A stretch of DNA of 64,000 nucleotides, taken from the NCBI GenBank assembly GCA_965235115.1, contig OZ249437.1:49600001-49664000 (forward strand), given 5' to 3'. Below are positions 92-15,436 of the stretch, piece after piece (the first letter of the stretch is position 1; each line of letters begins with the position of its first letter). Made by a program: the position numbers and the translations under genes. Origin of the DNA: Laetmonice hystrix (taxonomy: Eukaryota). The notes under the pieces are model-generated. The model made no database searches and was not told the origin of the DNA. It saw nothing but the letters and a program-made list of their open reading frames with translations.

Positions 92-1891
92 TCAATGCCT
101 TATGTGATCGCAGTAGAATTTGACATGCTGTGAATCTTTTTTCAGCATCTTAGTCATGTGAAAGGGGAATATGTAATCAGCATTGCTCCGGCTCCCCGTG
201 ATGCTGCCATAGACGAGATATTCGGGGGTAATCTCGATGCACTCAAGCATGAGCATGGTGATGATATCGTACCGGGTGACCTCGGGGTCAGACAGGTACA
301 CGTCCGTGATTTGAGTGAAGAGGTTGGTGAGCCTACTGGGCAGATAGTGAACGACGTCAGACAAGTAGAGCACAGAGTTGGCTAGGCGAGGGTCGGCTCC
401 CATCTTGTTAAAGCACTGTTTCAGTTTCGTCTTGAACTTGCTGCCCATGTCGAGTCTGGGCAGCCAGGTGCTGAGGGTGGTCAGCACGTCCCTAGAGAAC
501 GTCAGGCAGCGTACGGCGCCCTGACGACACAGCGTTTGTAACGGCGCGTCATCCACCACGATATCCTGCGTCATCCACATCTGAGTCGGGCTGTGTGAAC
601 GCAGCTTAGCCGCCTGTAGGAACGCCGTCTCCGGGGCGTACAAGTAACCGCTCACATTGTACCCCATTTTGGTTGCCATGGCAATGCAGGACGCGGCCCC
701 GGCTTCGTTGGGAAGGGACACGGCAGAGACCCTCCAGTAATGAAGGATTGCTGGGTTGATCTGCTTGTGCTGGCTGCTTGTGATGCAGTAGAGGATATTG
801 GGAAATGAAGCTCTGTACCAAGCCTCTAAGATTGGAATGGCATCGGGTTGACCGTTCATGTGGATAACGAGCAAGGTGTCAGAGAACATGCCTACTGGAG
901 CGTTCATCCGGGATACTGGAGGAGGCTGGAGGACCACCTGACCAGCACACACTGACGTCACAGCGTCCCAAACCTGAACGCGGCTTAACACACTGTGTGG
1001 CAGGAAATTATGGATGGAGTGAGGCAGCGACGTGGGCTGTTCATACGGGTAAAACGTGGCTTCCTGTAGTTGACTGTCCGACCCTGAGCACAGAGTTGGT
1101 TGTGGGTCCTTGAGTGATGGAGGGATGTAACCCAGTCCAGACAGGTCTTGTAACCAAGCGTCGACGATATCAACATCAATTTGCTGCCAGAAGCCTGCTG
1201 AAACCATGTGACGTGCAAGGTCTGAGATACAACTGAAAAAGTGCATGCGAGAACACTGCCAGCGTCTCAAAGATTCCAAAAGTTCTCCCATTCGTATAAA
1301 GTCTGTTTCCTGTTTGGCATCACTAATGGTATTGTGTTTATTGCGTCGATGAATTATGTTAGGAGGGTAAAATCCAACTTGTCCTGCAACAAGCCAGAGA
1401 AGACGCTGTGCCCAGTAACTCCTGTAAATGTCACATGTACGAAATGACGTCGTTGCCGGTAGAACCAATGCCCAGAACGCCTTATAACGGTAAAGTGTGT
1501 TCTGCGAGTTTGTCGGAGCAAACGTGCCGTATGGAAGAACTACCGGTGGCGCATGCGTGTCAAAGTTGAGGTCCATTGGGGTTTGGGCGTGTTTTCTTGT
1601 CAGCCTGAAGATGGCGTCGACGTCGGGGTCAGCGTTGGTGAGACCTTGTTGGATGGCGGGGGCATGCATGGCGGTGCGCAGGACGTAGTTATGGGGGGTG
1701 GGTTCTCCGATGTGTTCCAGTGGGAATCCTCTTGGCCAGGTGGTCGACTGACCGAAGTGAACGTACGGATTGTACGACAGGTTGGTGGTACAGACGGTAA
1801 GCGCTGACACTGGGGACGTGGTGTGGAAACTATGCAGGTCGTCCATCGGCAGGTTGTCGTCATCCACCTCGTAAATCACCTCGGCGCCATG
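92..1891 (-). CDS. Paralog A terminal coding exon (rest of N-terminal GT domain and whole C-terminal domain)
   Basis: Acceptor tgtaattcag| then HGAEVIYEVDDDN; 1800-nt open frame to the stop ending at 92 (ORF 92..1879). Confidence 0.92.
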   Translation of the reverse strand, partial: HGAEVIYEVDDDNLPMDDLHSFHTTSPVSALTVCTTNLSYNPYVHFGQSTTWPRGFPLEHIGEPTPHNYVLRTAMHAPAIQQGLTNADPDVDAIFRLTRKHAQTPMDLNFDTHAPPVVLPYGTFAPTNSQNTLYRYKAFWALVLPATTSFRTCDIYRSYWAQRLLWLVAGQVGFYPPNIIHRRNKHNTISDAKQETDFIRMGELLESLRRWQCSRMHFFSCISDLARHMVSAGFWQQIDVDIVDAWLQDLSGLGYIPPSLKDPQPTLCSGSDSQLQEATFYPYEQPTSLPHSIHNFLPHSVLSRVQVWDAVTSVCAGQVVLQPPPVSRMNAPVGMFSDTLLVIHMNGQPDAIPILEAWYRASFPNILYCITSSQHKQINPAILHYWRVSAVSLPNEAGAASCIAMATKMGYNVSGYLYAPETAFLQAAKLRSHSPTQMWMTQDIVVDDAPLQTLCRQGAVRCLTFSRDVLTTLSTWLPRLDMGSKFKTKLKQCFNKMGADPRLANSVLYLSDVVHYLPSRLTNLFTQITDVYLSDPEVTRYDIITMLMLECIEITPEYLVYGSITGSRSNADYIFPFHMTKMLKKDSQHVKFYCDHIRH

Positions 1892-4800
1892 CTGAATTAC
1901 ACAAAATACAAACCAGAAATAGAATGGACTGCCTTCTTAATATCCATACACTAATACCTAACAAGATTCCACGTTATTTTACCCTCTCAACTTTTGGTTA
2001 ATGGTTTCCATATATTAACTGGTTACTGGTTGCCACAAAAACGTTCAGCACTATGTCTAGTCTAATTCTTCTATTGTTACCTACCTCTGGAAAGGCTCAA
2101 ACAATTTCCATTAATTTACCCCGACTGAAGGAAACACGTGGGAGGTCTACACGAGAGTTCCTTCATGAGACAGTCCACTGATTCTACCAACAAACCACCA
2201 TACAGTTGTCCCACAACCTTGGTTGTATATCTTACCATCGGTAAATCTATTTACCTGAATGGCATAAAGGTATCCAAGAACCTTCCTGGCGTAGTTATCG
2301 TAGGGCAGCAGGCTGGTGACGGTGTAACCGAGGTGTTCCTGTTGGCTCAGGTCTAGGAACTTCACACCCGGGAGGCTGGTAAACCAACAATGATGACATT
2401 AACTACGGACCATGTACAGGGCTGAACACATGACATTGCATGCTACCTCGTGCCATCCGTCAACAACAAAACAATACAGGTCCGTGGGCTGGGAGGAGGC
2501 ACACGGCACGGGGGCAGTTCATTCCCGCTAATCCTGACAAATTGGGCTCGTTTTGACAAGCCCGTGCCTGTTTAATTTGATAGAAATATGCCCTCAGCGC
2601 CAAGTGTCCCGACATTCGGACCTCACCACGCCCCTAGAAATTATCAGCTGACTACATTCCTGGACAGGCGTATCAATCAACTTATAGAATTGTGAATTTA
2701 AGATCTCATTTTCGTAATTCACCTTTTAGTGGTTGAATCACGGACGTGACTAGCAGCACTAACAGTCTGCCAACAGATATGTACCGGTGACAGTCCGTGG
2801 ACCTGATATCAATGCAATCAGCAACTACACACGTCACAGTCTCGACATGATTCACACAGTAATCACCGATTTTATTCAGGTCGCTCTCATTCTGTCGACA
2901 GAGACATGGAATCTGACTTAACGTTACGTGATAGATTTTACGTGTTTCTTTAAATGCTAATTTTGGGCCTTTCTTGATCTATTCTACAGCGACAATAAAA
3001 TGACGGCAAATGGCAAGGAACTGATTTTAGCACGTATAACCTGTCAAAAATGTGTTAACTTTCGTACATTTTCAGGTGTTCATATTTCATGTCTCGAGCG
3101 ACTGCTTAAAATGGTCGCACGAAGTTCATCTAAATCATTATATAAATACCCCGATCAAGGTCAATCAAGATAATGCTCAAGGTCGGTACAAGTAAAGTTC
3201 ACTGATTCTTGTTCGAGTTTGATCTTCAAAAGTTCAATGCAAAAAGTTGAGAGTTATCTTAGTACACCTTTATTCATACCATCATAAGGTTGCCACCAAA
3301 AGTAGTCACCGTGACCTATGCAGGCTTTCTGAAACCATCTGAATTTTCTTATCGAAAGATTACACCGGTACTCAAAGTTCTATATTTTTGCATCGTATCA
3401 CTTTCTCAGATTAAACAAACAATGGAAGTGGGAAAAACCTAATGAATCAAAATAATCACAACTCAGCTATGCCGTGAGGTCTAAAAATAGGTAAACGGAG
3501 GTTGTGTAAATTAATTGCTGCACAAAAAGTGCGAGGAGACTGAAAGACGAGTGAAGGTAAAGGCCAACCTCCAGGAGGCGGGTGTCTTCCTGTCGCCGAC
3601 CACAACCATCTTCCATCCAGGAAACTTGACGAGTTCTCGGAGTGCGTGAGTTGGCTGCTGGATGGTGGTGACGACGATCCAGCGTGCGTGCGACTCCTGG
3701 GGATCGTCTTCCGGTCGGCTGCGCGCGCCGCCCGCGCCGCCACCGCCCCCGCCCAGCGCCTCCCCAACCACGCGAACTTCATCGAGAACCTGCCGGGCCA
3801 CAAACACCACATCAAACACCAAACTCTGCACCCAAATCGTTTTATAATGGACTTTTATAACACCGCTGATTTCATGAAATTCATCGGTGATAATGCGTCT
3901 TATCTAACCACATGCGCCATTATAATTTAACCAACGTACCAGTTATAAACATAATATCGGCCAACTGGACCCAACGAGCCCATCTCTTGAGAAGCTTACT
4001 ACAATTCACACCTGCCAGTTGTACATATAATTTCGTCCATGTATTCCGAAGGGAAGGCGGTTTAACGTTGCGCTCAACATTCTGTCTTCCATTCTCTTCT
4101 TCCATAAATATTTGTTCTACCTTGCTCCCTTTTTAGATGTTAGAGCAACCAAAACTGAATACAGCTACAGAAAACACAGGTTTAAATTTGTATATATTTT
4201 GTTCCTCTCCATGCCGTTCAGTTCTGTTGATGGTATGGTATTTTGGCCTTATAAACGTACCAGACAATACGCAGGTTAAATTTCAAAAGATCCCAGTTCC
4301 AAGAATAGAACGGGGTCCAAAGAACATCTTCCATGGAAATATGAAGTCATCTCATCAGGTTGCCATCGTTACAAGGATGTCAAAACGACTACCCCCCCTC
4401 GTGTACACCATTCCAAGAATGATATCTAGTGATAAAAGACAGCTCCATAAATTCAGACTGCCATCATTTAGCAATGAGCTTCATTGGGAGCCGGTCTACC
4501 ACATCAATCTAGACGGCGACGAGCACGATACTTTACCCATGCATATTTCAAAAACCTAATATTCCCTCAGGCAATTTCAACATTATTTGCTGACTTCAGT
4601 CAAAGCCTTCACGGTTGAAGCGGGTTCTGTTGGAAGGGATTTTACTTCTTCACGGCATCAAGTCTGTAGAATGATAACCGCTACTGCTGAATTAAAAAAT
4701 ATTACAGTTCACAAATCGATAGTGGCCACGTCATTCAGAATATAACCGCATCTTACTGGCATAATAACATGGCACGAAATTGTATTTCATCTACAGGATC

Positions 4801-7800
4801 TTTCCATAACCATCCTTAATATAGAACCACTAGTTCCTAAAAAGTGTAAGACAGGAATCGGAGAATTCATATCTCACAGTGGTTCTCAGCTTGGGTTCCA
4901 AGAACTAATGGAACACCACAGCTATGGTTCCTTGTTCTAAGATGTGTCTGCATCAAAATGTAATTCCAGGAAAAACGTCACGGTTTTTGTAGCTGTCAAT
5001 AATGGCATGTCCTGCATCTCCTGTTCTTAATGTATAACGGTTTACAGTTGGCGTCACTAAAGATAATGGATCGTCCCTTCAAGTGACCTGCTTGCATGCT
5101 GCTGTTTACCAAGGATTGTGCCTTTTTTCCCCTGGTCCTAAAGATGAAAACAACCCAAACCAATCTTCTACACACGAAATGGAGACTCACAGTATAAACG
5201 ACATTTCGCCTTGAAAAATTCCAAGTGTTCCGGTGCGACATGCGATGAATCAACGCAAGCGCCTTAAAAGCTCAGTGTATAAAGGCACAAGTTGTCTAAC
5301 ATTGGATGTAGTGTAGTTGACATTGACAAGCTTGCTATTTTGCCGTTTGTCAGGTGTACAGGGCCTGGGTGTGGCCCACATTGCTGAAAGGTCACGAGAA
5401 CGAACAGGCCTGTCATGTGACGACAAATAAACAATCTGCAAGCCAGATCCGCATTCACAGCGTATTCCTTGCTTATTCCCGACATGAGGAAGACACGGTT
5501 AAATCGAAAACTGCAATTAACGCGAGACTTTCAGCAGCACAAATTAGCTTTTCTCCTATCTGCGATTCCAGAAGGCCAATGAAGAATAGGTCCTATCAAT
5601 TTACTGTCGTACTGCCATTACGTCTCTATGTAGTAAACGAAGATGGGAGTGTGCTCGCCAAATCACAAAGTTTATCAAACACACGAACGGTGCAGCTGAG
5701 ACTGCCTGTTTAAAAAGCCTCAAATCTAATCAGATATAACCCTAACTGGTCATCCTTATGTTCTTCCTTTAACAGTTATGGACACTCACGTTTCACGAAA
5801 CCATTTCTGACTAAGGTAAAACATTAACCCCATCTGATATTTCGGTGCTCTTTAAAACTCACCAGAAATCTTTTTTATGTTTAAAGATGGCTAAAGATAG
5901 GTATGTCGTTTTTAGAATTCACAACGACGAAATTCTTTTAGTCTTTCACTGACAAAACAATGACAACCTTAGAACGAACTTATGGTGTTGATATGTGTTT
6001 TCACTCGAGAATATTCACACCTCAAAGATCACGAGCGAAACATCACTCACTACGACATATTGACAAGGGCCTTTCGTCCATTACTGTACAGAAACTAGGA
6101 TATAGTCGAGTTACTTCGCAATCACAATATCGTACAACTTCTCATTTTATCACTGTTTAATGTTTGTTCTTCCAATAACTGCCAACTGGTCGACTCCATT
6201 GGTGTCATTTGTCGTACAGGTTCCACCTGACAACAACAGGAGAAAAATGTCGGTGGAAACAGGAAACGACGGCGAATTTACGGCAGGACTTCCTCCAGGG
6301 CTTGGAGTTATTGACCGCGTAAGAAACCTTCTGTCGCAGAGAAAAGGAAACAAATGATTTAAGCATCGCGCCTCCTCGGCTTAGTCGGCTACACAGATCC
6401 CCTTTCATTACGTATTCATTGCTGCAAATCAATCTCATCACTTATTCATTTCGCCCATAAATCGGGTAAAAATCTCGGTCCAGTCACAGAGATTAGCCCA
6501 AAACCTTTGATCCGTTCTCACAGCCATCGCCTTGGGACAGGATCAACAGCTCATATAACTGCCAACACCGTCCGCACAGCCTCAATCCATAATCTGCCCA
6601 CTTTATTTTCGTGCCATTCAATTAATATTTCGGGATTTCACTCTCTCCTTAATTTCTTTTGCACAAACTGCTAATGCGGCTCAAGGAAAACCTTCCGTTT
6701 TCATTTGGTATCCTACTGCTAAAACCTTAACCACATCGATATCACCTAGATCTATGAAAATATCTGCCGCGACTGTTGGCCGTATCTGTACTTTGGTTCC
6801 CGGCAGGCTAAGATTACCATCCCTAATATTTCACGGAGGCTATAATTAGAAAGACTTATTCACTATATCGAATAGACTCCACTTCGAGGACGCCGCTGAC
6901 AGAATCTCAATCAGAACCCACCATGAGTAAATTATCTACAAAATTCCGCAGAGAATATATAAAACGAACAAGAATCAAGCGTACCACGACTGCGTGCAGG
7001 AAAAAGTTTGCTTCTATACCTTTAGCTTTCTCTCACTTCATTCATTTATAATAATGAATCAAATACATAGCTAGAGGTCCCATGCAGAAATTCACAAATG
7101 CCAACCTTTAAATAGGAGGAGGGCATAGTAGAGCAAATTTGATGTAGGAGTCGATATATAGTAGTCCGGGCGTACTGTCCTGATTCAGAAAGTCTGACCA
7201 CATCAGTCTTCTAGACTTGGATCTGGCTGGCTTGCCCGCCACGTGGGATTGTAATCTATACCATAACGGTTCGAGACACAGTTTAGTCTGCCGTTTTATC
7301 TCCGGTATCTACAAGGGCGACAGAGTATACTCGGTGCCAAACCGCTGGGGTCCTATGATTAACATATCAATACAGCCATACCCTGCCCACTCCACCCGGG
7401 CCGGGAATCAATTACTGCTACTGCACTGGCGGTCAACCTGCCGGCCAAAATATCTATACCCCTCAATTGGCCACCGCTGCCCATGCAATGTTCCCTTCTC
7501 TCCGCCTATGGCTAAAAGCAAGTTGCTTTCGTGCGTATTGATCAACATGTACGTTACTCCGAGGTATTTAATTTCCCATTCAATTTGTGTTTTTCAGCCA
7601 AAGGACCGTGCCACATAATAAAAGAGTCTGGTGCCCAGTGCTCGGCTGAAACGATCTGGCGCTCGTGTTGGCGGAGAGAAGGTAGGAGAGAGCACTTACC
7701 CAGTCTGTCGGCGGTCTCCAGAAGAGTTTCGAGAGTAGGAAGAGAACGAGGAGGCCGCAGCAGACGAGAGCGGCCAGACGCTTCTGCATGCGCCTCCCCA

Positions 7801-7801
7801 T
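92..7801 (-). CDS. STELLO-like (DUF288) type II membrane glycosyltransferase, paralog A; complement(join(92..1891,2255..2375,3569..3789,7700..7801)), about 747 aa
   Basis: Four GT-AG exons join in frame (2244 nt; intron phases 0,2,0). N-terminal basic tail plus hydrophobic segment, then family-type motifs WIVVTTI, WKMVVVGDRKTP, GYLYAIQHGAEVIYEVDDDN, WPRGFPL, IQQGL..DPDVDAIFRLT and DIYRSYWAQRLLW. Family assignment is from recalled motifs. Confidence 0.9.
2255..2375 (-). CDS. Paralog A exon 3 (S-LPGVKFLDL...VLGYLYAIQ)
   Basis: tttaccag| acceptor and CAG|gtaaat donor; phases 2 and 0 match the neighbouring exons. Confidence 0.88.
3569..3789 (-). CDS. Paralog A exon 2 (Gly-rich stem, WIVVTTIQQPT...GDRKTPASW)
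   Basis: Motif content; acceptor gcccggcag| in phase 0 (an upstream in-frame acceptor is also possible); donor AG|gttggc is weak but phase-consistent. Confidence 0.8.
4270..5720 (+). mobile_element. Highly degenerate non-LTR retrotransposon (LINE, possibly CR1/L2-like) reverse-transcriptase remnant in intron 1 of paralog A
   Basis: Eroded RT-like motifs in the expected order across frameshifts: IPVPRIERGPKN (cf. VIPIFKKG), SSDKRQLHKFR (cf. LSDCQYGFR), gacttcagt-c-aaagccttcacggtt (DFSKAF-TV), LLHGIK, KCSGATCDE (cf. KYLGVTID), YRAWVW. Alignment by eye; boundaries approximate. Confidence 0.4.
7700..7801 (-). CDS. Paralog A first coding exon (cytosolic tail and signal anchor MGRRMQKRLAALVCCGLLVLFLLSKLFW)
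   Basis: ATG at 7801, hydrophobic segment, consensus donor TGG|GTAAGT in phase 0. Confidence 0.78.
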
Positions 7802-10800
7802 GGCAACCGTCTCACCAGTTGCTCGGCCGCATCGCCTCTTTATACCGCTGCGTTTTTAGCCCACCTGCATAGCAGCAAATCAAAAGAGTTCACAGGCATG
7901 AGACAAACAATTACCTCGTCAACAATCTCCAGGAGTAACTGATTCCAACCAGTCCTAAATCAAAGAGCTCTTAATTAACTAGATGCAGTAAGACATAGAA
8001 GGCATTCATACCTGTTGAAAATGAATAAAACATCACAGACCTTTATAACAGGGCATTTACTATACGTGTATGAGTCAAGGCCGAGCTTTGGAAGAGCTCA
8101 GTGTCGGGTAACCCTGAGCGGCCATGAAAATCCATATGTCACGCACATGTAAATTGGCCGGGTTTGGCACCTTATAACAAGCTTCTAAATATGGGCAACA
8201 GGGGACAATAAACTCGTGCTGGGTTATGGCGTCGTTCTGCCCATAAATCAACCCTAACATCAGCTCGTGATTTACTCAATATCTACACTGGTTCTTCTAT
8301 TCTATATAATCTTGACAAAGGGAATCGGGGGGGGGGGGGGTGTCAGAGAGAGATAGAGAGACAGACAGACACAGAGGTGGGGCTTGAATCAGCGCGAGTG
8401 CTGTCCATTTTGAACCGGTTACTCCGTAGATCTTTGACGTAAAAATATAAATGACAAAGGTCCGACTCTCAGTATTATATACACCTCTACACCCACTGAT
8501 GATACCCCGGTCTCCCATCGGATTACTTCCTACGGAGCTTTCTAATTAGATTTACAAAAACCTAGGATTAAGGCTGAGCTGATCGTTATAATGGGTTGAA
8601 AATACATTAATAAACTTGCAAGTACTCGTGTGCTCTGAATTGGATGTAAAACCTGATCATCCGAGATAATTACCATACACACATGATAGACCTACACCAT
8701 TTCTCCTGTACAAAGTGTTCTTATCACATCGATATTAAACAGTCAGTAAGGACAAGACTTCAGCGAATATCCAACCTAATACTGAAAATTCTACTGTCTT
8801 CAGTGAGGCTTCACCGGATGGCCCGGCATCCCCTGCTCCTAACTTAACCAGGGGTTTGGGTTAATCTAAAGATCCATAACTACACACGACGACATGCTGC
8901 CTTGATCAAGACCGCGTTCTGGTTGAGGGGGAGGAAAGAAGAAAATCACCGGTACTTTCTACAAACCACTCTACTGGTCAGCGCTGTAAAAAAAATCTGT
9001 ATTGATTTTTCTTTGGCTTCATACTTTGTAATCATACAGTGACAACGTTACTTCTCATTGGGCAAGGGCATGGGAAGGTCAGGTAGCTATTTAGGGTCTA
9101 TCACAGGTGTTTGTGTGATGAATGTCCCAACGCCTCCTTTCATGTCAAAATCACATCTCAAAATCACGCAAGCTGCTGTCGTGTGCACTCTATTTTTAGG
9201 CCAGAACACATTTGTCCACTTGCAAATTGCTGGTTCATTTAAAAGGTGGCTACCGACCAGATGTGGCTGGAGAAAGGGGACAAGGCAAGGTGGGAAAGTG
9301 GAAGGGGCAGTGCGAGATGGTTGTCTGGCTATGTGAATCACGTGGAATGCCTGTCTTGATCATGCCAGGGAGCTCTTTCAGCTATGTGAGCTGCCTGTTT
9401 AAACCATGCGGGGTTGGTGTCAGGTAGCTGTTTCAGTTGGATGTTCGGTACCAGTTTTGGGGTGTCACTGTCAGGGATGGCTGTTCAAGTCGAATAGGGT
9501 GGCTGTTGGCATTGTTGGGGATGGTTGCTTGGGTTGTTGGTATCGACTGTTTAGGCTGTATGGAGCTGCTGTTAGGATTGCTCTCGCACTAATCGGGCTA
9601 TGTTGGAGTCCTGCCACACCCTCTTCGTACATTATAGCAATCAATATTCTAGCCACAAGTTTCCTGAAAACCCTTTATTTTATTACCACAAAGACAGCAG
9701 ATAGAAGCTAGTCGGCTTACCCTATAATAGTAGAGGTATTACACGTGCCTCATACATCTATATTTTCCCAAACGTGAGAGGTTCTTGGACATTTATCTGT
9801 GTTTTGAGGTCACCAGGGCATTGGTCTGCTTATCGTAACTCCATAATCCAAATAAATGACATCATTAGGTATGCAGAGGTGGAGGTGACCGAGTGTATCA
9901 GCTGAATAGATACGTGGGTCAGTACCTCACTGATAACGAGTAAACTACTCACGTTACATCCTGTAGGCAATGTTTCAGACATATTCTGGCTGGGACTGCA
10001 ACGTTTATAACTTGTACAGTCTAGGTCTATTGGGTTGTGTATGTGTGTGTGTGGGGGGGGGGGGTATTTGGTGTGGAGCCTGGGGGGGGGGGGCATGATG
10101 AGGATAAAGCGCACAGGAGGATGGCTTTATTAGTACAGTATCATTATCTTCATAATATTTAATCTTCCACGCCTTGCTTTTGAAAAACTGAAGGCTCACA
10201 ACAAAAAGCACATCTAAAATGATGGAAGGCACAATTTTTAATGGTCTTCAGTTATGAGCAATAGTAGGGGTTTGACCAGCCTTTTATTCTCGTATCAAAT
10301 GTGATGCCGATACCAATAGAATACTGTACTGATTGCAAAACTGATAGGTGTGTGGTCGCCGGGAGAGTGTAACTAGATTTTGTTTAGCGCGCCTTAAGGG
10401 ACTATAGCCTTTATTAGGTGCATTATGGTGTGCACACAATGGTAGGCTACGCTTTAAAACACATGGCCTGCTTTTCATTTTATCCTTAGAAATACAATTT
10501 GCTTTCTTTTGAAACAGTTGCTGCTAGATCACTATCGTAAAAATAACAACATGTTTGGTACATCTGGAACATAAATGTAAAAAAAAAACCATCAAATAAT
10601 TTCACTTTAGTGAGATATACCACCAAATCAGTTGAAGTATGCAAGGTTGATTCCGACTTTAGCACACGATGACAGAAAAAAAGGGAAAATTCTTATGTAA
10701 ATGCAACATGTAAACTGAATCATGAATCCAGTGGTATGTATAGAAAGTGGGGTGGGGATTATGCTAGTGAATAAGCCTACCAGTAGGTTATCTCCATGCA

Positions 10801-11099
10801 GTAGTAGGCCTCTGTATAGAAAGGGGGCAGGGATATGCTATAGCTATAGGCCTACCATATTAGCCTATACTAGGCCTATAGCCTAGTATAGGCCTATCTG
10901 TAGCTTTATAATTAAATACTGACCAACTCCTATGCGGAACCCTTTTTACATTAGATCACCTATTCGACCAACGCCTTATCTTGGGCTCGCATGTCGCTGG
11001 AGCACACCACGGCCCGCAGTAATCGTTTCGCCTGTTATCCCTCATTTATTACTTTGCGGTTTACCTGGACATTGCCACTGAACGGCGGACATTCGCGCC

Positions 11100-11650
11100 G
11101 AAAATAAAAACATGCGTCGGAAATGATCGCCACTCGGTTGCCATGGTCAAGATATGGACCAGATCAAAGGTAATGTTCTATTTTAGCATACGTTTCAGAT
11201 CGACGTTAGGTACTAATGCCAACAGACGTACATGCAGACGAAGAGTGTATCGGTGTGGCTGTACATGGCCACGACCGCATCTAGCGTGCATGCCGGGGAG
11301 GCCAAGCCAAGGCGGCCGCTATCGCCAAGCATGGAAAGCCCAGCTTTTAAACGGCAGTGTGCGGCCATATATAAGCTCTGCCCTCCAAGATAATCGTGTT
11401 TCTTGTACGGCGATTGGAGGGAGGACCTGACTTCTATTCCTGCCGCCTACTACCCCGTTGTCTGTCCAAGAAACAACCCCAGAACCAAGCTCTCACTTAC
11501 CGTGATCAGCGGGTGACATGACCCAGTTCAGCCTTGTCGATAGCTAGGTAAAACGCAGCACCAAAATAAGGAGTAGTCGAAACGGACCGCGCGCCTTGTT
11601 GTGGGCTGCGGAAACCGACGGCGTGTGGTAAATGGGCGGCCCAAGCAGCT
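11100..11650. promoter_or_regulatory. Candidate shared promoter / 5' non-coding exon region between the divergent paralogs
   Basis: Locally GC/CpG-rich; TATATAAG at 11368..11375; plus-strand donors AAG|GTAATG (11170) and TAG|GTAAAA (11548); minus-strand donor ACG|GTAAGT (11500). Both ATG exons have upstream acceptor-like sites (7865 minus, 12265 plus). Confidence 0.35.
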
Positions 11651-12273
11651 CACGGAACATTTGGTCTGTTCAAGTGCAAGCAAGATAAATTTCCTCATCA
11701 CTGGAGACAGAAAATCAATGGCCTGAGGAGTGCACAGGAAATAAGTAGCAGCTTTCATTCGTGATGGTGCTTTCGAAAACACAGAAATAAATCTTGGGCT
11801 CATGGATGCGTGCCTTTAAAAGTGCATGTATGTGAGCAGTGTAGAAAGATACCCAAAATAGATGTGTTCCTTTTTAAACATTTCAATAAAGTATAAAGGA
11901 ATCATTTCTCCGTGCAGTCATAATGCCAGGGACCATTTCTCCCGCCTGATGCCAAGTTGCTAGTCTACCCGGCACGGTACTTACATTATAATATATATTC
12001 CAAAAGATGTTTGGGAGTGAGTGAGTGGGGGAGTGAGTATAGGCCTAGTTGGTGTTTAACGCCCAGTCAGTCGTATTTCACCTAGATCTATATTAGGGCG
12101 AGAACAAGGTAACTGTCAGTCGGAGAGATGGTTCTGAATCGAACTTCAGTAAACTAAAGATTTATAGTTACCTATATATCATCTTTATTATTATAGAGTA
12201 TAGATAATAGTACATGTACCGTATTGTAGAAGTTATAATAATTGTGATTTGATTTTCTGTAAAAGTGACGTAG

Positions 12274-12381
12274 ATGACCTTCGAACCAATGGCCATGTGG
12301 CGGTGGACTTGGTGGTCAAGGACGACCAGACGACTCGCACCGTTCGCCCTCCTTTTCCTGGTCTTATACATTATTTATCTG
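12274..12381 (+). CDS. Paralog B first coding exon (Trp-rich tail and signal anchor FALLFLVLYIIYL)
   Basis: ATG at 12274 (in-frame ATGs at 12289 and 12295 are alternatives); donor CTG|GTAGGT in phase 0. Confidence 0.75.
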
Positions 12382-15300
12382 GTAGGTTCTGTAACATATT
12401 TTTCTACAGCAGCCTCTGTCAAACTATTACCCCAGTATATTAATATTGGGGGTTTAAAAACCTTGTTGAAAATATAGGCCTACACGGTATGCATTACAGA
12501 TGGGGTTTTTTTTGTATAAAATTGTTCCTTAGATATTCTGATCAAATATACACAGAAACTTAATTTATAAAAAGAACTGTTCCCGAGTGGTTTCCTCCAT
12601 TATAATTGGTCTTTCCTTACCAATCCTGTCTCTATTTTCAGCACGTGCGGGAGGTGAGACAGGGTGCTGATGTTCAGAGTAAACCGTTAGCCACCCGCAC
12701 ACCCCCCTCACCTGACCCAGGGTTGGTCACGTGGGTGGTGGTCGATGCCCGTGGCGCCCCGCCAGCCGAGGCATGCCATGGGGCCCTCAACCTCTACAAC
12801 AGCTGGACTGTGCTCGTCTATGGGGTGGACAAGCCAGATGCCAACAGGTATACATAATGGCATGATACTACAGACAGACGAGTCTGGTTCTACATTATGC
12901 TGCAGATATATTCCAACAAGATCCTCATTTCTTGCTTCGGACTGGGTGACAAAATTAATTGGGTTTTCGAGATATCCTGTGTACTGATAATAGAGGCAAA
13001 ATCGGTCTGGACCCCATATTACATGTTCGGCAATCGCCCAGTTACAGAGTCATAATATTTCAACTATAATTTGAATGTTTGGGATCACATTAAGTTGTTT
13101 TTGCAGTGTGTCCCGGTGCCGGTACCTGCCCAATCTAGATTCTCCACTGTGGTCAAAGCTAGGCATTGCTGACAACACCCTTTCAGAGGAGTTGAAGGCA
13201 TACTTATACGCCATTAAGGTTAGTTCTACCCTAGTCACAGTCACACGACTTGTTATCAAGTTTAACGACACAGCTCTGAGAGGCGTTCCCCTGGCGGTGG
13301 CCAGATGATAGTTTCAAGTGAATTTTAAAGTCTGAAAAACTACATAGGCCTACTTGTATTCTTTTGGTAGAGAAGAAAATATACGTCTTTATGGAAATAT
13401 ATACATAGGTATACTTCCATATACATGTGTACACCCATCATAAACGGAATGACCAAGTTTATATGAAGCTGTCGCCTCTGTCGGCAATATCATATTTGAC
13501 CTTCCAAATATCCTGGTGTAAGGATTAAATCATCAGAGCAGAAAATGATTTTTTTCAGGAGGGTGCTGAGGCTATATACGTCCAGAGTGGTAGGCCTACT
13601 GCTTCAGGTAGCAGGACAGAGGCGAAGATTGTAGAGCACACCTACGAGGGTCTCATGTACGGCGCTCAGTCTGGTAGTAGTGCCCACTTCAGGGCCTTGG
13701 AACATTTCGGGTGCAGGACGGAAGACGAAACGTCTGTTCAGAATCCAGGTCCTAGTCCTGTGTACAACATATGCAAGCACAAAGTTCCTGCTATTCATGC
13801 ACCCGCATATATTACCATTCCACACTTTACAGTCACCCAGGATGGGAGCGATAGAACGAGAGAAATCGCACCTTGTGACAGGAGAGCTCCTCCAGTAACT
13901 CTTCAAGTCGGAACTTTCGCAGATATTGAACTACAGGAGGCGTTGTACACCAGTGATGCATTCTGGGCCCTGGGACTACAATCTATCAACACCAAAGGAC
14001 ATAATATAGCTTTAGGATACACCATTCAGAAATTGCTGAGTTTAGTGGGTCAACGAATTCAGGTTCATTACAATGAGGGGTTAGCTTTAACGAAGTCAGA
14101 AAGTCCTGCATTAAAAACGACAGCATATCTAAACAAGATCACACAAAATCTAAACCAGTGGAACTGTCAGGCATCAGAGTTCATGTTGTGCGTTAATGAC
14201 TTGTTTTCTCACTTGGGGGCGCTCAGGTTGTTGGAAACAGATCTCAAGAAACGCCTGACAGTTTGGTGGGAGGCATTGCTACAAATCGATTACAACTACC
14301 CGGTGTTAGGAGAGGGTGAACTAGACCTGAAATGTTACAGTGGTCAGGTGATCTTTCACCCCATTGATCTAAACCTTAAGATTCCCTGGAGACAGTATCG
14401 CTCAAAACCCTTCCAGCCACTCGCCAATGCTGAGCAGACTCTGTCTACTTTTCAACAGACTTGTTCTAGTTATAAGATCAAAGCTGATTCGTTTCATACG
14501 GTGAACCTTACCCACCCTTGGTCTCAAGCTGAGTCCATACTCCTCATCGTAATCTTCAATACCCCACACTACGAGGCCATACCTTACGTTGAACTCCTCT
14601 ACAGACCATTTTACCCAAACCTTGTCTATTGTGGCCCGGGACTACCAGATCTGAAAAAGTTTCCACAACTTGCAAATTATAAGCTAACTTTCCTCTCCTA
14701 CAACCCGACCCCGGCTGGCCACTTTCCCGGTGCGTTTAACTATGAATGCGTCGCCATGGTCATGCAGATGCAGTACGCTGTCAAAGGTTTTCTAGTGATC
14801 TCTGATGATATGTTTGTGTCTTTCTCCCACTTAAGTGGATATTCCGATCAGGCCGTGTGGTTCTTGCCAAAAGCAGAAGTAAAGATAGGTGAGTTGACGC
14901 ACCTGATGGAGTGTCGTTTGGGGATGTGTGACTTCCATCCCCACTGGAGATGGTGGGAGGACTACCAGGCTCAGACTCTATCGGCCCTAGCTGAACTCAA
15001 ACAGCGCCACCACCACCACTATACCTTCTATCGTTGTTACCGACAACTTATAGAAATAACCGGTGGCGACGGACGCGCCCACGGAGCCTACTCCGACATA
15101 TTCTACATTCCTCAACGACTTGCCACACAGTTCAGCACCATGGCCGAATTCTTTTTGGAGAAACAGGTTTTTCTTGAGATAGCCGTGCCCTCAATTCTAT
15201 GGTGTCTCGAACGACCGGAAAAAATAACAGAAATGAAGGGATTTCAGAGTTGGGAGCTGTCAAGGGATCAACCCTGGGTTCATTTTAACAAGAGGAACTA

Positions 15301-15436
15301 CCTGGGAAAGGTCTACTTCCACCCAGTCAAGTGGGGCCACCTAGTGGCGGGAGTTCGCAAAATGTCCGACCTCCTCTGTACCAGTCTCTTGCCCTATTTG
15401 CATGATCCATACGGTAGAATGCTGGCAAATACGTGA
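12274..15436 (+). CDS. STELLO-like (DUF288) type II membrane glycosyltransferase-like protein, paralog B; join(12274..12381,12642..12847,13107..13218,13559..15436), about 767 aa
   Basis: Four GT-AG exons join in frame (2304 nt; phases 0,2,0). Clearly similar to paralog A: YLYAIK|EGAEAIY vs YLYAIQ|HGAEVIY; PPVTLQVGTFA..ALY..AFWAL vs PPVVLPYGTFA..TLY..AFWAL; ILLIVIFN..EAIP..E..YR..YPNLVYC vs LLVIHMN..DAIP..E..YR..FPNILYC. Confidence 0.88.
12642..12847 (+). CDS. Paralog B exon 2 (stem, WVVVDARG...SWTVLVYG)
   Basis: ctattttcag| acceptor and AG|gtatac donor; homologous to paralog A exon 2. Confidence 0.82.
13107..13218 (+). CDS. Paralog B exon 3 (...KAYLYAIK)
   Basis: tttttgcag| acceptor and AAG|gttagt donor; ends at the same motif as paralog A exon 3. 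Confidence 0.85.
13559..15436 (+). CDS. Paralog B terminal coding exon
   Basis: tttttttcag| acceptor in frame with ORF 13655..15436; begins EGAEAIY; TGA at 15434..15436. Confidence 0.9.
   Translation, partial: EGAEAIYVQSGRPTASGSRTEAKIVEHTYEGLMYGAQSGSSAHFRALEHFGCRTEDETSVQNPGPSPVYNICKHKVPAIHAPAYITIPHFTVTQDGSDRTREIAPCDRRAPPVTLQVGTFADIELQEALYTSDAFWALGLQSINTKGHNIALGYTIQKLLSLVGQRIQVHYNEGLALTKSESPALKTTAYLNKITQNLNQWNCQASEFMLCVNDLFSHLGALRLLETDLKKRLTVWWEALLQIDYNYPVLGEGELDLKCYSGQVIFHPIDLNLKIPWRQYRSKPFQPLANAEQTLSTFQQTCSSYKIKADSFHTVNLTHPWSQAESILLIVIFNTPHYEAIPYVELLYRPFYPNLVYCGPGLPDLKKFPQLANYKLTFLSYNPTPAGHFPGAFNYECVAMVMQMQYAVKGFLVISDDMFVSFSHLSGYSDQAVWFLPKAEVKIGELTHLMECRLGMCDFHPHWRWWEDYQAQTLSALAELKQRHHHHYTFYRCYRQLIEITGGDGRAHGAYSDIFYIPQRLATQFSTMAEFFLEKQVFLEIAVPSILWCLERPEKITEMKGFQSWELSRDQPWVHFNKRNYLGKVYFHPVKWGHLVAGVRKMSDLLCTSLLPYLHDPYGRMLANT

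What the first reader, a model, noticed from the sequence alone, without database searches (positions are those of the whole stretch)
92..15436. Two STELLO-like glycosyltransferase paralogs with reciprocal loss of acidic motifs: a candidate EXT1/EXT2-style split enzyme
Seen in sequence: each protein has two homologous luminal domains. In the N-terminal domain, A has HGAEVIYEVDDDN (DDD at 1856..1864), DPDVDA (1613..1630) and DIYR. At the same exon-anchored position B has EGAEAIYVQSGRP (SGR at 13586..13594) and no DPDVDA or DIxR. In the C-terminal domain the pattern flips. B has GFLVISDDMF (14786..14809), SDIFYIP, FLEIAVP and FHPVK, whereas A has GYLYAPETAF (626..649), SDVVHYLP, YDIITM and FPFHM. 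Established: acidic DxD-type motifs coordinate metal and nucleotide-sugar in GT-A enzymes; Arabidopsis STELLO1/2 are Golgi type II proteins of this family; in the heparan-sulfate polymerase EXT1-EXT2 each subunit supplies one active domain. Inference: a two-site ancestor duplicated and subfunctionalised, so A and B may form an obligate heteromeric two-activity glycan polymerase for an unknown animal glycan. That the C-terminal DD, FxEIAVP and HPxK motifs are family-conserved is recalled, not computed.
Basis: partly seen in the sequence, partly recalled or inferred. Interest (0 to 1): 0.85.

Follow-up and report, generated by a model that had tools for sequence, protein, structure and literature searches.

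The report
Split two-enzyme gene pair in a worm
Two neighbouring worm genes descend from one two-part sugar-handling Golgi enzyme, and each has kept the working centre of a different part and a dead copy of the other, which suggests (untested) that the two proteins now share one job.

Summary
A (minus strand, 4 exons, 759 aa) and B (plus strand, 4 exons, 767 aa) are intact, head-to-head STELLO/DUF288 genes. They are the only family members in this 627-Mb annelid genome.

The two luminal domains are not homologous to each other. The N domain is GT75-like, closest to the NDP-pyranose mutase MtdL and to plant UDP-arabinopyranose mutases. The C domain is a GT-A fold closest to GT31 transferases.

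A keeps all 12 MtdL-type active-site residues and has lost the C-domain DxD, Glu and His/Lys. B is the exact reverse. The same split holds in 34 A-type and 23 B-type proteins, while 35 canonical proteins keep both sets.

A and B occur together in three other assemblies. They are head-to-head in one, on one contig in another and unlinked in the third. An RNA-like run of the same sample holds both genes and confirms B's splicing.

Subfunctionalisation is well supported. A heteromer is untested: the complex prediction gave no answer. The "EXT-style co-polymerase" reading is weak, because the N domain looks more like a sugar-nucleotide mutase. In Arabidopsis STL1 a DD591-592AA mutant, very probably the C-domain DxD, still complements.

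The parts
7700..7801 (-). Gene A exon 1: start codon and type II signal-anchor (MGRRMQKRLAALVCCGLLVLFLLSKLFW...)
   Evidence: Gene model; GTAAGT donor read; hydrophobic 19-mer at residues 9-27 and alignment with the Capitella orthologue P0006.
3569..3825 (-). Gene A exon 2: stem plus the first strands of the GT75-like domain (WIVVTTIQQPT, VVVGDRKTP)
   Evidence: matched by the canonical profile in the whole-genome search; aligned with orthologues.
2255..2375 (-). Gene A exon 3 (…YARKVLGYLYAIQ)
92..1891 (-). Gene A exon 4 (599 aa plus stop): the rest of the GT75-like domain with an intact active site, a helical linker, and a degenerate GT-A C domain
   Evidence: Open reading frame. Model pLDDT 89.9, pTM 0.91. 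Foldseek matches STL1/STL2 and MtdL/UAM. phmmer against MtdL gives E 2e-12.
1334..1864 (-). A's GT75-type active-site motifs: DDD 1856-1864, WPRG 1727-1738, DPDVD 1616-1630, NSQNT 1496-1510, FRTCDIYR 1421-1444, HRRNKH 1334-1351
   Evidence: Residue-by-residue alignment to MtdL D109-111, R159, D195/D197, S228, R257/D260 and H287/R289/H292 (roles taken from PMC9937993). Conservation table; coordinates.
95..925 (-). A's C domain: GT-A fold retained, catalytic set lost (LYAPETAF 620-643, SDVVHYLP 338-361, RYDIITM 254-274, FPFHM 155-169)
   Evidence: hhalign of A-C against B-C gives probability 99.7. Only structural residues plus D732 are conserved in the A-type clade. Site table.
7802..12273 (.). 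4.5-kb spacer between the two divergent start codons: a candidate shared (bidirectional) promoter region
   Evidence: Inferred from the head-to-head layout and from the same layout in ENA ERZ21781341 ctg57878l. No promoter was tested.
12274..12381 (+). Gene B exon 1: start codon and type II signal-anchor (…RRLAPFALLFLVLYIIYL)
   Evidence: A similar exon lies upstream of the B-type gene in L001.
12642..12847 (+). Gene B exon 2: degenerate first strands of the N domain (WVVVDARGAPP, VLVYGVDKPD)
   Evidence: The 3' junction is confirmed by a spliced contig of run X4, which joins 12844 to 13104 with the cut +3.
13107..13218 (+). Gene B exon 3 (…KAYLYAIK)
   Evidence: Spliced contig, and a loose end at 13219 that reads the start of exon 4.
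13559..15436 (+). Gene B exon 4 (625 aa plus stop): degenerate remainder of the N domain, linker, and an intact GT-A C domain
   Evidence: Open reading frame. Contigs of the RNA-like run X4 lie on it, including its degenerate N part. hhalign of canonical-N against B-N gives probability 99.7.
13580..13597 (+). VQSGRP loop that replaces the DDD motif in B; it carries an in-frame 6-bp deletion in the same sample's DNA contigs
   Evidence: Deletions of 4 + 2 bases at 13593 and 13598 appear in DNA runs X1 and X2.
14480..15433 (+). B's C domain: GT-A fold with its conserved set (LVISDDMF 14792-14815, SDIFYIP 15092-15112, FLEIAVP 15170-15190, FHPVK 15317-15331)
   Evidence: Model pLDDT 91.7. The DD sits directly after strand 103-108. 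Matches: STL1/STL2 C-termini, GT31 enzymes, CHSY3. The sites are invariant in B-type and canonical proteins, except the His (16 of 20 B-type).

Best explanation
A and B are subfunctionalised paralogues of an ancestral two-domain STELLO-type Golgi protein. That ancestor had a type II anchor, a GT75-like N domain, a helical linker and a GT31-like GT-A C domain.

[quoted passage not shown] A's C domain is a folded pseudo-domain. B is the mirror image: a decayed N domain, and an intact C-domain set of a DxD after strand 4, an Asp, a Glu and His-Pro-x-Lys.

Inferred: the two proteins act in one lumenal pathway. A would act on or prepare a nucleotide sugar and B would transfer a sugar to an unknown acceptor. 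They are expressed together, in this genome probably from a shared divergent promoter. Each would keep the other's dead domain because it still serves folding or association. A physical A-B complex is plausible, since plant STL1 and STL2 dimerise, but it has not been shown.
For: - Both genes are intact, with the same exon plan. Both match PF03385.
- They are the only family members in the genome.
- The reciprocal site pattern is conserved across 34 A-type and 23 B-type proteins. 35 canonical proteins keep both sets.
- A-type and B-type each form one clade with SH-aLRT 100. A+B as one clade is not rejected (AU p 0.318).
- A-type, B-type and the Priapulus-type canonical clade share a 5-Cys signature.
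- A's N domain matches MtdL at E 2e-12, with every catalytic residue aligned (residue roles from PMC9937993). Foldseek also finds MtdL and the UAMs.
- B's C domain is a confident GT-A model closest to GT31 enzymes and CHSY3, with the DD at the canonical DxD position.
- Constraint is flipped. A-type and canonical proteins are more conserved in N than in C. B-type proteins are more conserved in C (40-75% identity) than in N (24-60%).
- The degenerate domains still fold confidently and keep their cysteines.
- The head-to-head layout recurs in an assembly whose A-type and B-type proteins are only 34-39% identical to A and B.
- RNA-like run X4 of the same sample holds both genes and confirms B's splicing.
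- STL1 and STL2 form homo- and heterodimers (PMC4906169).
Against: - There is no direct evidence that A and B interact or act in one pathway.
- In ENA ERZ25767047 the A-type and B-type genes lie on different large contigs, so linkage is not essential.
- In Arabidopsis STL1, DD591-592AA complements stl1 stl2. That residue pair lies inside 516-769, the region Foldseek aligns to B's C domain. R271A, the GT75 Arg, also complements (PMC4906169). In plants, therefore, neither the C-domain DxD nor the mutase-type Arg is needed for that phenotype.
- Most family members have Gln where MtdL has its Mn-binding His287.
- The tree does not resolve A and B as sisters.
- A-type C domains keep a clade-specific Asp (D732) and usually an Asp/Glu near the 'SD' position. 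An altered, metal-independent site cannot be excluded.
Confidence: 0.55

Rival explanations
1. One reading: A and B form an obligate heterodimeric two-activity glycan co-polymerase of the EXT1/EXT2 type. Each subunit supplies one glycosyltransferase site, and together they build an alternating polymer.
For: - Each protein retains one site and one folded pseudo-domain.
- Canonical relatives carry both sites on one chain, as known bifunctional polymerases do.
- The C domain resembles the GT31-like domain of chondroitin synthase CHSY3 (Z 14.5).
- Plant STLs dimerise (PMC4906169).
- The pair is head-to-head here and in one other assembly.
Against: - The N domain's nearest characterised relatives are NDP-pyranose mutases / Arg self-glycosylating proteins, not chain-elongating transferases (PMC9937993).
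- No polymer or acceptor is known.
- EXT1 itself carries both activities (PMC9675754), and in CHSY-CHPF one partner is wholly inactive (PMC13389171). A fully reciprocal split would therefore be unprecedented, not 'EXT-style'.
- The genes are unlinked in ERZ25767047.
Confidence: 0.12
2. A and B are independent enzymes. After duplication each copy simply lost a dispensable activity. A works alone as a GT75-type enzyme and B works alone as a GT-A transferase, in pathways that need not be connected. The dead domains persist only as structural ballast.
For: - N-domain-only proteins are common in cnidarians, so the GT75-like domain can work without the C domain.
- Other lineages hold N-degenerate or C-degenerate paralogues beside canonical ones.
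- The genes are unlinked in one assembly.
Against: - Both clades have kept the dead domain as a folded, cysteine-conserving unit over deep divergence instead of deleting it.
- This genome has exactly one gene of each type and no canonical copy.
- They co-occur in all four assemblies where both could be checked.
- The divergent layout is conserved at about 35-39% protein identity.
Confidence: 0.2
3. One or both proteins are mainly non-catalytic scaffolds or regulators of another Golgi complex. This follows what is proposed for plant STELLOs with cellulose synthase, and what is shown for CHPF, which only stabilises CHSY. On this view the conserved motifs serve ligand binding rather than turnover.
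For: - No catalytic activity of plant STL1/2 is reported in the paper read here; they interact with CesAs and affect complex assembly.
- DD591-592AA and R271A still complement (PMC4906169).
- CHPF domains are inactive stabilisers (PMC13389171).
Against: - The catalytic-type residues are invariant or nearly so: 12 of 12 in A-type N domains and 6 of 6 in B-type C domains (the His in 16 of 20 B-type). They include a general-base Asp, a nucleophilic Arg and the DxD, and sit in otherwise fast-evolving proteins.
- STL1 DD205-206AA and DVD297-299AVA abolish function (PMC4906169).
- Animals have no CesA complex of the plant kind (own knowledge).
Confidence: 0.12
4. Artefact: one of the two is a decaying pseudogene or a mis-assembled copy, and the 'reciprocal' pattern is decay noise.
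For: None beyond the degenerate motifs themselves.
Against: - Both reading frames are intact across four exons.
- Each type has dozens of orthologues with the same pattern.
- The models are high-confidence.
- There is a spliced transcript contig for B, and both genes are held by the RNA-like run.
- Within-sample variants in B's linker and C domain are 8 synonymous to 1 non-synonymous.
Confidence: 0.01

Closest known systems
Arabidopsis STELLO1/STELLO2 (Pfam PF03385, formerly DUF288)
   Same: - Same family by Pfam and by full-length fold match (E about 1e-37).
- Type II anchor, GT75-related N domain with a DD(D) and a DxD motif, C-terminal domain.
- STLs form homo- and heterodimers (PMC4906169).
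   Different: - As far as the published mutagenesis implies, the two plant proteins are redundant paralogues that each carry both motif sets.
- A and B each carry only one set.
- The plant function (CesA complex assembly) has no obvious animal counterpart.
- The plant sequences themselves could not be fetched here.
GT75 NDP-pyranose mutases: MtdL (PDB 7xpr/7xpu/7yua) and plant UDP-arabinopyranose mutases / RGPs (rice UAM2, 8cid)
   Same: - A's N domain matches MtdL by sequence (E 2e-12) and by fold (25% identity, TM by target 0.53-0.55).
- It keeps D109-111, R159, D195/197, S228, R257, D260, H287, R289 and H292 of MtdL.
   Different: - GT75 enzymes are soluble, single-domain and cytosolic or bacterial.
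- A is a lumenal, membrane-anchored protein with an extra GT-A-fold domain.
- Most STELLO-family members have Gln at the His287 position.
- In STL1 the equivalent Arg is dispensable (PMC4906169).
- No activity was tested.
GT31 GT-A transferases (B3GNT2, B3GalT5/6, Fringe, C1GalT1, fungal GfsA) and the GT31-like domain of CHSY3
   Same: - B's C domain has the same fold (Foldseek E 1e-8; VIA Z 12-14.5).
- Its DxD sits directly after strand 4.
   Different: - There is no sequence-level membership. No Pfam GT31 model matches any of 65 C domains.
- GT14 enzymes score equally well.
- The downstream motifs (SDxxYIP, FLEIAVP, HPxK) are the family's own.
EXT1-EXT2 heparan sulfate polymerase
   Same: Paralogous two-GT-domain type II proteins that work as a heterodimer in which not all four sites are active (PMC9675754).
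   Different: - EXT1 catalyses both reactions and EXT2 perhaps one. The loss is one-sided, not reciprocal.
- The domains are GT47 + GT64, unrelated to GT75-like + GT31-like.
- An A-B complex has not been shown.
CHSY-CHPF chondroitin synthase heterodimers
   Same: Paralogues with a GT31-like domain, a linker and a second GT domain. Pseudo-domains of one partner stabilise the active domains of the other (PMC13389171). This is the best precedent for keeping dead GT domains.
   Different: - All activity sits in CHSY, and CHPF is dead in both domains.
- In A and B, each chain keeps exactly one candidate active site.

Membership tests
STELLO / DUF288 (PF03385) | Match to the Pfam model above its gathering score | tested here: met
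   A 64.3 bits and B 41.1 bits against a cut-off of 27.8. The whole-genome scan finds only these two loci.
STELLO / DUF288 (PF03385) | Type II topology: short N-terminus, one signal-anchor, large lumenal part | tested here: met
   One strongly hydrophobic 19-mer near the N-terminus of each protein (A residues 9-27, B residues 20-38). Topology itself was not tested experimentally.
STELLO / DUF288 (PF03385) | GT75-related N domain with the DD(D) and DxD motifs that STL1 needs for function | tested here: met
   Met for A only: DDD170-172 and DPDVD248-252. For B it is tested and NOT met: VQSGRP replaces DDD, and no DPDVD, WPRG, SQNT or DIxR is present.
STELLO / DUF288 (PF03385) | C-terminal GT-A-fold domain with the conserved DD, SDxxYIP, xxEIAxP and HPxK motifs | tested here: met
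   Met for B only. For A the fold is kept but the motifs are tested and NOT met (PET, RYDIITM, FPFHM).
GT75 (NDP-pyranose mutase / reversibly glycosylated polypeptide) | Conserved DDD metal motif, glycosylated/nucleophilic Arg (MtdL R159), Asp195/Asp260, Arg257, Ser228 | tested here: met
   Every residue is aligned and identical in A and about 100% conserved in A-type, canonical and N-only proteins. B: not met.
GT75 (NDP-pyranose mutase / reversibly glycosylated polypeptide) | Mutase or Arg self-glycosylation activity | not testable with these tools
   Needs an enzyme assay. In plants STL1 R271A still complements (PMC4906169), which argues against a strict need for the Arg there.
GT75 (NDP-pyranose mutase / reversibly glycosylated polypeptide) | Match to the Pfam RGP model (PF03214) | tested here: not met
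   No PF03214 hit at E up to 1 for A or B. The relationship shows only through phmmer against MtdL and through fold comparison.
GT31 (CAZy) / Pfam Galactosyl_T, Fringe | Sequence membership in the family models | tested here: not met
   None of the 65 C domains scanned hits PF01762 or PF02434 at E up to 1.
GT31 (CAZy) / Pfam Galactosyl_T, Fringe | GT-A fold with the DxD after strand 4 | tested here: met
   Model pLDDT 91.7. Top solved matches are B3GNT2, B3GalT5, Fringe, C1GalT1 and CHSY3. D558-D559 follow strand 103-108 of the model.
Heteromeric bifunctional glycan polymerases (EXT1-EXT2, CHSY-CHPF) | Stable heterodimer of the two paralogues | tested here: inconclusive
   The complex prediction gave 'no answer'. 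No experimental data exist.
Heteromeric bifunctional glycan polymerases (EXT1-EXT2, CHSY-CHPF) | Two transferase activities that alternately extend one polymer | not testable with these tools
   No acceptor or product is known. The N domain's nearest characterised relatives are mutases, not elongating transferases.

The most novel reading that the evidence does not exclude
STELLO-family proteins are lumenal two-step machines: a GT75-type nucleotide-sugar mutase domain feeds a GT31-like transferase domain. In this annelid clade the machine has been split into a fully reciprocal pair of half-dead paralogues. These would work as an A-B heterodimer with one live site per chain, an arrangement seen in neither EXT1-EXT2 nor CHSY-CHPF. 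The pair would build an undescribed, possibly furanose-containing, animal glycan.
Probability: 0.15. Interest if true: 0.85.

Novelty: new variant of a known kind. Interest (0 to 1): 0.6.

Why it matters
No biochemical activity was found for STELLO proteins in the papers read here, in plants or in animals.

The annelid pair is a natural separation-of-function experiment. Long-term selection has kept the GT75-type centre in one gene and the GT-A centre in the other. This argues that both centres are functional in animals, even though the plant mutagenesis found the C-domain DD dispensable.

The pair also offers two simpler proteins on which each activity could be assayed alone, and then together.

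If the two do pair, this would be the first fully reciprocal pseudo-domain heterodimer among Golgi glycosyltransferases. The mutase-like identity of the N domain also raises the testable idea of lumenal furanose-donor synthesis in animals.

Tried and rejected
- Complex prediction: A exon-4 product plus B C domain gave 'no answer', score 0.00, and the controls were not run. This is evidence neither way.
- N domain against C domain homology: BLASTP and hhalign found nothing (probability 1% or less). The 'two homologous domains' idea was dropped. Both are GT-A-type folds by structure only.
- Sequence membership of the C domain in GT31: no Pfam hit.
- Fetching plant STELLO sequences to map DD591-592 exactly: the representative search listed no protein with STL1 numbering. 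The last homologue search, with P0259, returned chytrid, protist and rotifer relatives. The paper's supplement has only a figure legend. The mapping therefore rests on Foldseek's aligned range, 516-769.
- AU test on the 111-row tree did not finish. It was repeated on 45 rows.
- dN/dS: the closest relative's contig (ERZ26222911) has no retrievable DNA, and the other orthologues are too divergent. Only protein identities by domain and 11 within-sample variants were used.
- Upstream flanks of B-type genes in L010 and L011 and of A-type genes in L012-L014 hold no partner exons within 10 kb. This is uninformative except for ERZ25767047, where the two genes sit on different contigs.
- No run is on record as RNA. 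X4 is treated as RNA only because its contigs lie on exons and one is spliced.
- The protein atlas added nothing beyond family names.
Full report
**What is there.** Reading both strands gives two divergent four-exon genes.
- Gene A (minus strand): exons 7801-7700, 3825-3569, 2375-2255 and 1891-92; 759 aa.
- Gene B (plus strand): exons 12274-12381, 12642-12847, 13107-13218 and 13559-15436; 767 aa.
- Both are open throughout, with GT..AG introns at the same three positions.
- Each begins with one hydrophobic signal-anchor.
- The start codons are 4.5 kb apart, head to head.
- Both match Pfam PF03385 (STELLO, formerly DUF288) above the curated cut-off.
- A's N-terminal exons align with the annotated Capitella teleta orthologue.

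**The genes are real and expressed.** Four runs of one sample hold both last exons.
- Two of the three runs laid on the sequence (X1, X2) cover introns evenly and are DNA.
- The smallest run (X4, 59 M letters) has contigs on exons only.
- One X4 contig skips 12844 to 13104 (cut +3), which is exactly my B intron 2. Its loose end at 13219 reads the start of exon 4.
- X4 therefore behaves as RNA, although it is not on record as such.
- X4 holds 41% of the sampled words of B's last exon and 66% of A's.
- X4 contigs also lie on the degenerate N part of B's exon 4, so that part is exonic.

**The two domains are different enzymes, not repeats.**
- Profile-profile comparison finds no N-to-C homology (probability 1% or less). 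A-N against B-N scores 99.4% and A-C against B-C scores 99.7%.
- The model of A's exon-4 product is confident (pLDDT 89.9, pTM 0.91). It matches Arabidopsis STL1 and STL2 over its full length.
- Its N part matches GT75 proteins: the GDP-fucopyranose mutase MtdL (E 7e-13, 25% identity), rice UAM2 and the plant UDP-arabinopyranose mutases.
- phmmer alone finds MtdL at E 2e-12. The alignment puts every residue that the MtdL paper (PMC9937993) calls catalytic onto an identical residue of A:
  - D109-D111 = DDD170-172
  - R159 (nucleophile) = the Arg of WPRG
  - D195/D197 = DPDVD
  - S228 = NSQNT
  - R257 and D260 (general base) = FRTCDIYR
  - H287, R289 and H292 = HRRNKH
- The model of B's C domain (pLDDT 91.7) is a GT-A fold.
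- Its best matches are the C-termini of STL1 [516-769] and STL2, followed by GT31 enzymes (B3GNT2, B3GalT5, Fringe, C1GalT1, B3GalT6), CHSY3 and GT14 enzymes.
- The DD follows strand 103-108 directly, which is the canonical DxD position.
- No Pfam GT31 model matches, so the GT31 likeness is at fold level only.

**The reciprocal pattern is conserved, not a quirk of this genome.** Searches with the two last exons returned 226 and 22 homologues.
- Canonical proteins of molluscs, Owenia, Priapulus and Folsomia carry both motif sets.
- Proteins P0001-P0032, which include Capitella, carry only the N set.
- Proteins P0121-P0142 carry only the C set.
- Cnidarian proteins of about 330-460 aa have the N domain only.
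- Counted by column:
  - The 12 GT75 sites are about 100% conserved in 34 A-type, 35 canonical and 35 N-only proteins. The exception is the His287 column, which is Gln in most of the family. In 23 B-type proteins the 12 sites are essentially absent.
  - The six C sites (D, D, D, E, H, K) are invariant in canonical and B-type proteins wherever the column is filled, except the His (16 of 20 B-type). They are lost in A-type proteins.
- A-type C domains keep cysteines and core residues, one clade-specific Asp (D732), and mostly Asp/Glu one position off the 'SD' Asp. A changed site cannot be wholly excluded.

**Evolution.**
- In a 111-row tree, A-type proteins form one clade (22 rows, SH-aLRT 100) that includes Capitella and Helobdella. 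B-type proteins form another (14 rows, SH-aLRT 100).
- The relation of these clades to each other and to the canonical clades is unresolved.
- In a 45-row tree the split {A-type, B-type, Priapulus-type | all others} has support 80.
- Forcing A+B into one clade costs 3.8 lnL (AU p 0.318), so sisterhood is allowed but not shown.
- A-type, B-type and the Priapulus clade share five cysteine columns that other canonical proteins lack in part.
- Constraint is flipped between the two types:
  - A-type orthologues, like canonical pairs, are more alike in N (51-88% identity) than in C.
  - B-type orthologues are more alike in C (40-75%) than in N (24-60%).
- In the same sample's DNA, B's degenerate N part carries 2 non-synonymous changes and an in-frame 6-bp deletion in the loop that replaced DDD. 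The rest of exon 4 carries 8 synonymous changes and 1 non-synonymous change. The numbers are small, so this is illustrative only.
- Other lineages also hold N-degenerate or C-degenerate paralogues beside canonical ones. One-site decay recurs in the family.

**Gene content and linkage.**
- Pfam and canonical-profile scans of the whole 627-Mb assembly find only these two loci. The animal therefore has one live GT75-type centre and one live GT-A centre, on different chains.
- Earlier notes of this scan call the animal a worm with giant cuticle collagens. The nearest named orthologues are annelid.
- In ENA ERZ21781341 ctg57878l the B-type gene lies on the minus strand (last exon about 29.6-31.4 kb, exon 1 about 39.9 kb). 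The A-type gene lies on the plus strand (exon 2 about 49.3 kb, last exon 50.6-52.2 kb). They are again head to head, at only 34-39% protein identity to A and B.
- In ERZ26222911 both genes lie on one 441-kb contig.
- In ERZ25767047 they lie on different contigs of 4.19 and 1.18 Mb, each far from a contig end. Co-occurrence holds, but linkage is not universal.

**How it most likely works.**
- Shown: complementary retention of two different catalytic-type centres, retention of folded dead domains, and presence of both genes in one RNA-like run.
- Inferred: A and B divide the two steps of an ancestral two-activity lumenal enzyme.
- Given the GT75 identity, I favour 'A acts on the nucleotide sugar (mutase-like or Arg-linked intermediate) and B transfers' over 'two transferases alternately extending a polymer'.
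- A fusion of the GT75-like STELLO part to an NDP-sugar dehydratase/epimerase domain (P0383) points the same way. It rests on a single contig, so it is only a lead.
- Against this reading, from Zhang et al. 2016 (PMC4906169):
  - STL1 R271A (the GT75 Arg) complements stl1 stl2.
  - STL1 DD591-592AA, which lies inside the C domain, also complements.
  - DD205-206AA and DVD297-299AVA do not complement.
- The same paper shows homo- and heterodimerisation of STL1 and STL2. That makes an A-B complex plausible.
- My one complex prediction gave no answer.

**Comparison with known systems.**
- The family is known but undescribed in animals. Searches for DUF288 and STELLO found no paper on an animal function.
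- The EXT analogy is loose, because EXT1 performs both reactions (PMC9675754).
- CHSY-CHPF is the better precedent for keeping dead GT domains as stabilisers, but there one partner is dead in both domains (PMC13389171).
- A fully reciprocal split would be a new variant.

**Verdict.**

Noticed in passing
window 13593-13600: The same sample's DNA contigs (runs X1 and X2) lack 4 + 2 bases here. This is an in-frame two-codon deletion inside the VQSGRP loop that replaces the DDD motif in B, so the loop tolerates length change.
   Followed up: partly
P0383 (Logan contig, 818 aa): The GT75-like STELLO N part (Pfam positions 1-114 at residues 356-469) is followed by a complete NDP-sugar 4,6-dehydratase/epimerase domain (491-796) in place of the GT-A domain. 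This hints that the N domain works on nucleotide sugars. It rests on a single short contig and could be chimeric.
   Followed up: partly
P0036 and P0043 (Priapulus caudatus, both on a 430,021-bp contig): A canonical N+C+ protein and a near-identical paralogue lie on the same contig. The paralogue's DDD column reads DEE. The Priapulus clade shares the 5-Cys signature of A-type and B-type proteins.
   Followed up: partly
L001 3779-7603 and L002 1392-3374 (ENA ERZ21781341 ctg57878l): A retrotransposon (reverse transcriptase, RNase H, integrase) sits between the divergent B-type and A-type genes of that species and widens the spacer.
   Followed up: no
The family is very large: 6,853 representatives at E up to 0.001. 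Atlas clusters with PF03385 are labelled as giant-virus (Nucleocytoviricota) and phage proteins, and mixed STELLO/RGP clusters occur in bacteria and phages.
   Followed up: no
(for example P0180, P0182, P0185, P0243; Lottia P0049): Other animal lineages carry N-degenerate, C-intact paralogues that branch beside canonical N+C+ proteins. Others carry N-intact, C-degenerate ones. One-site decay recurs across the family.
   Followed up: partly
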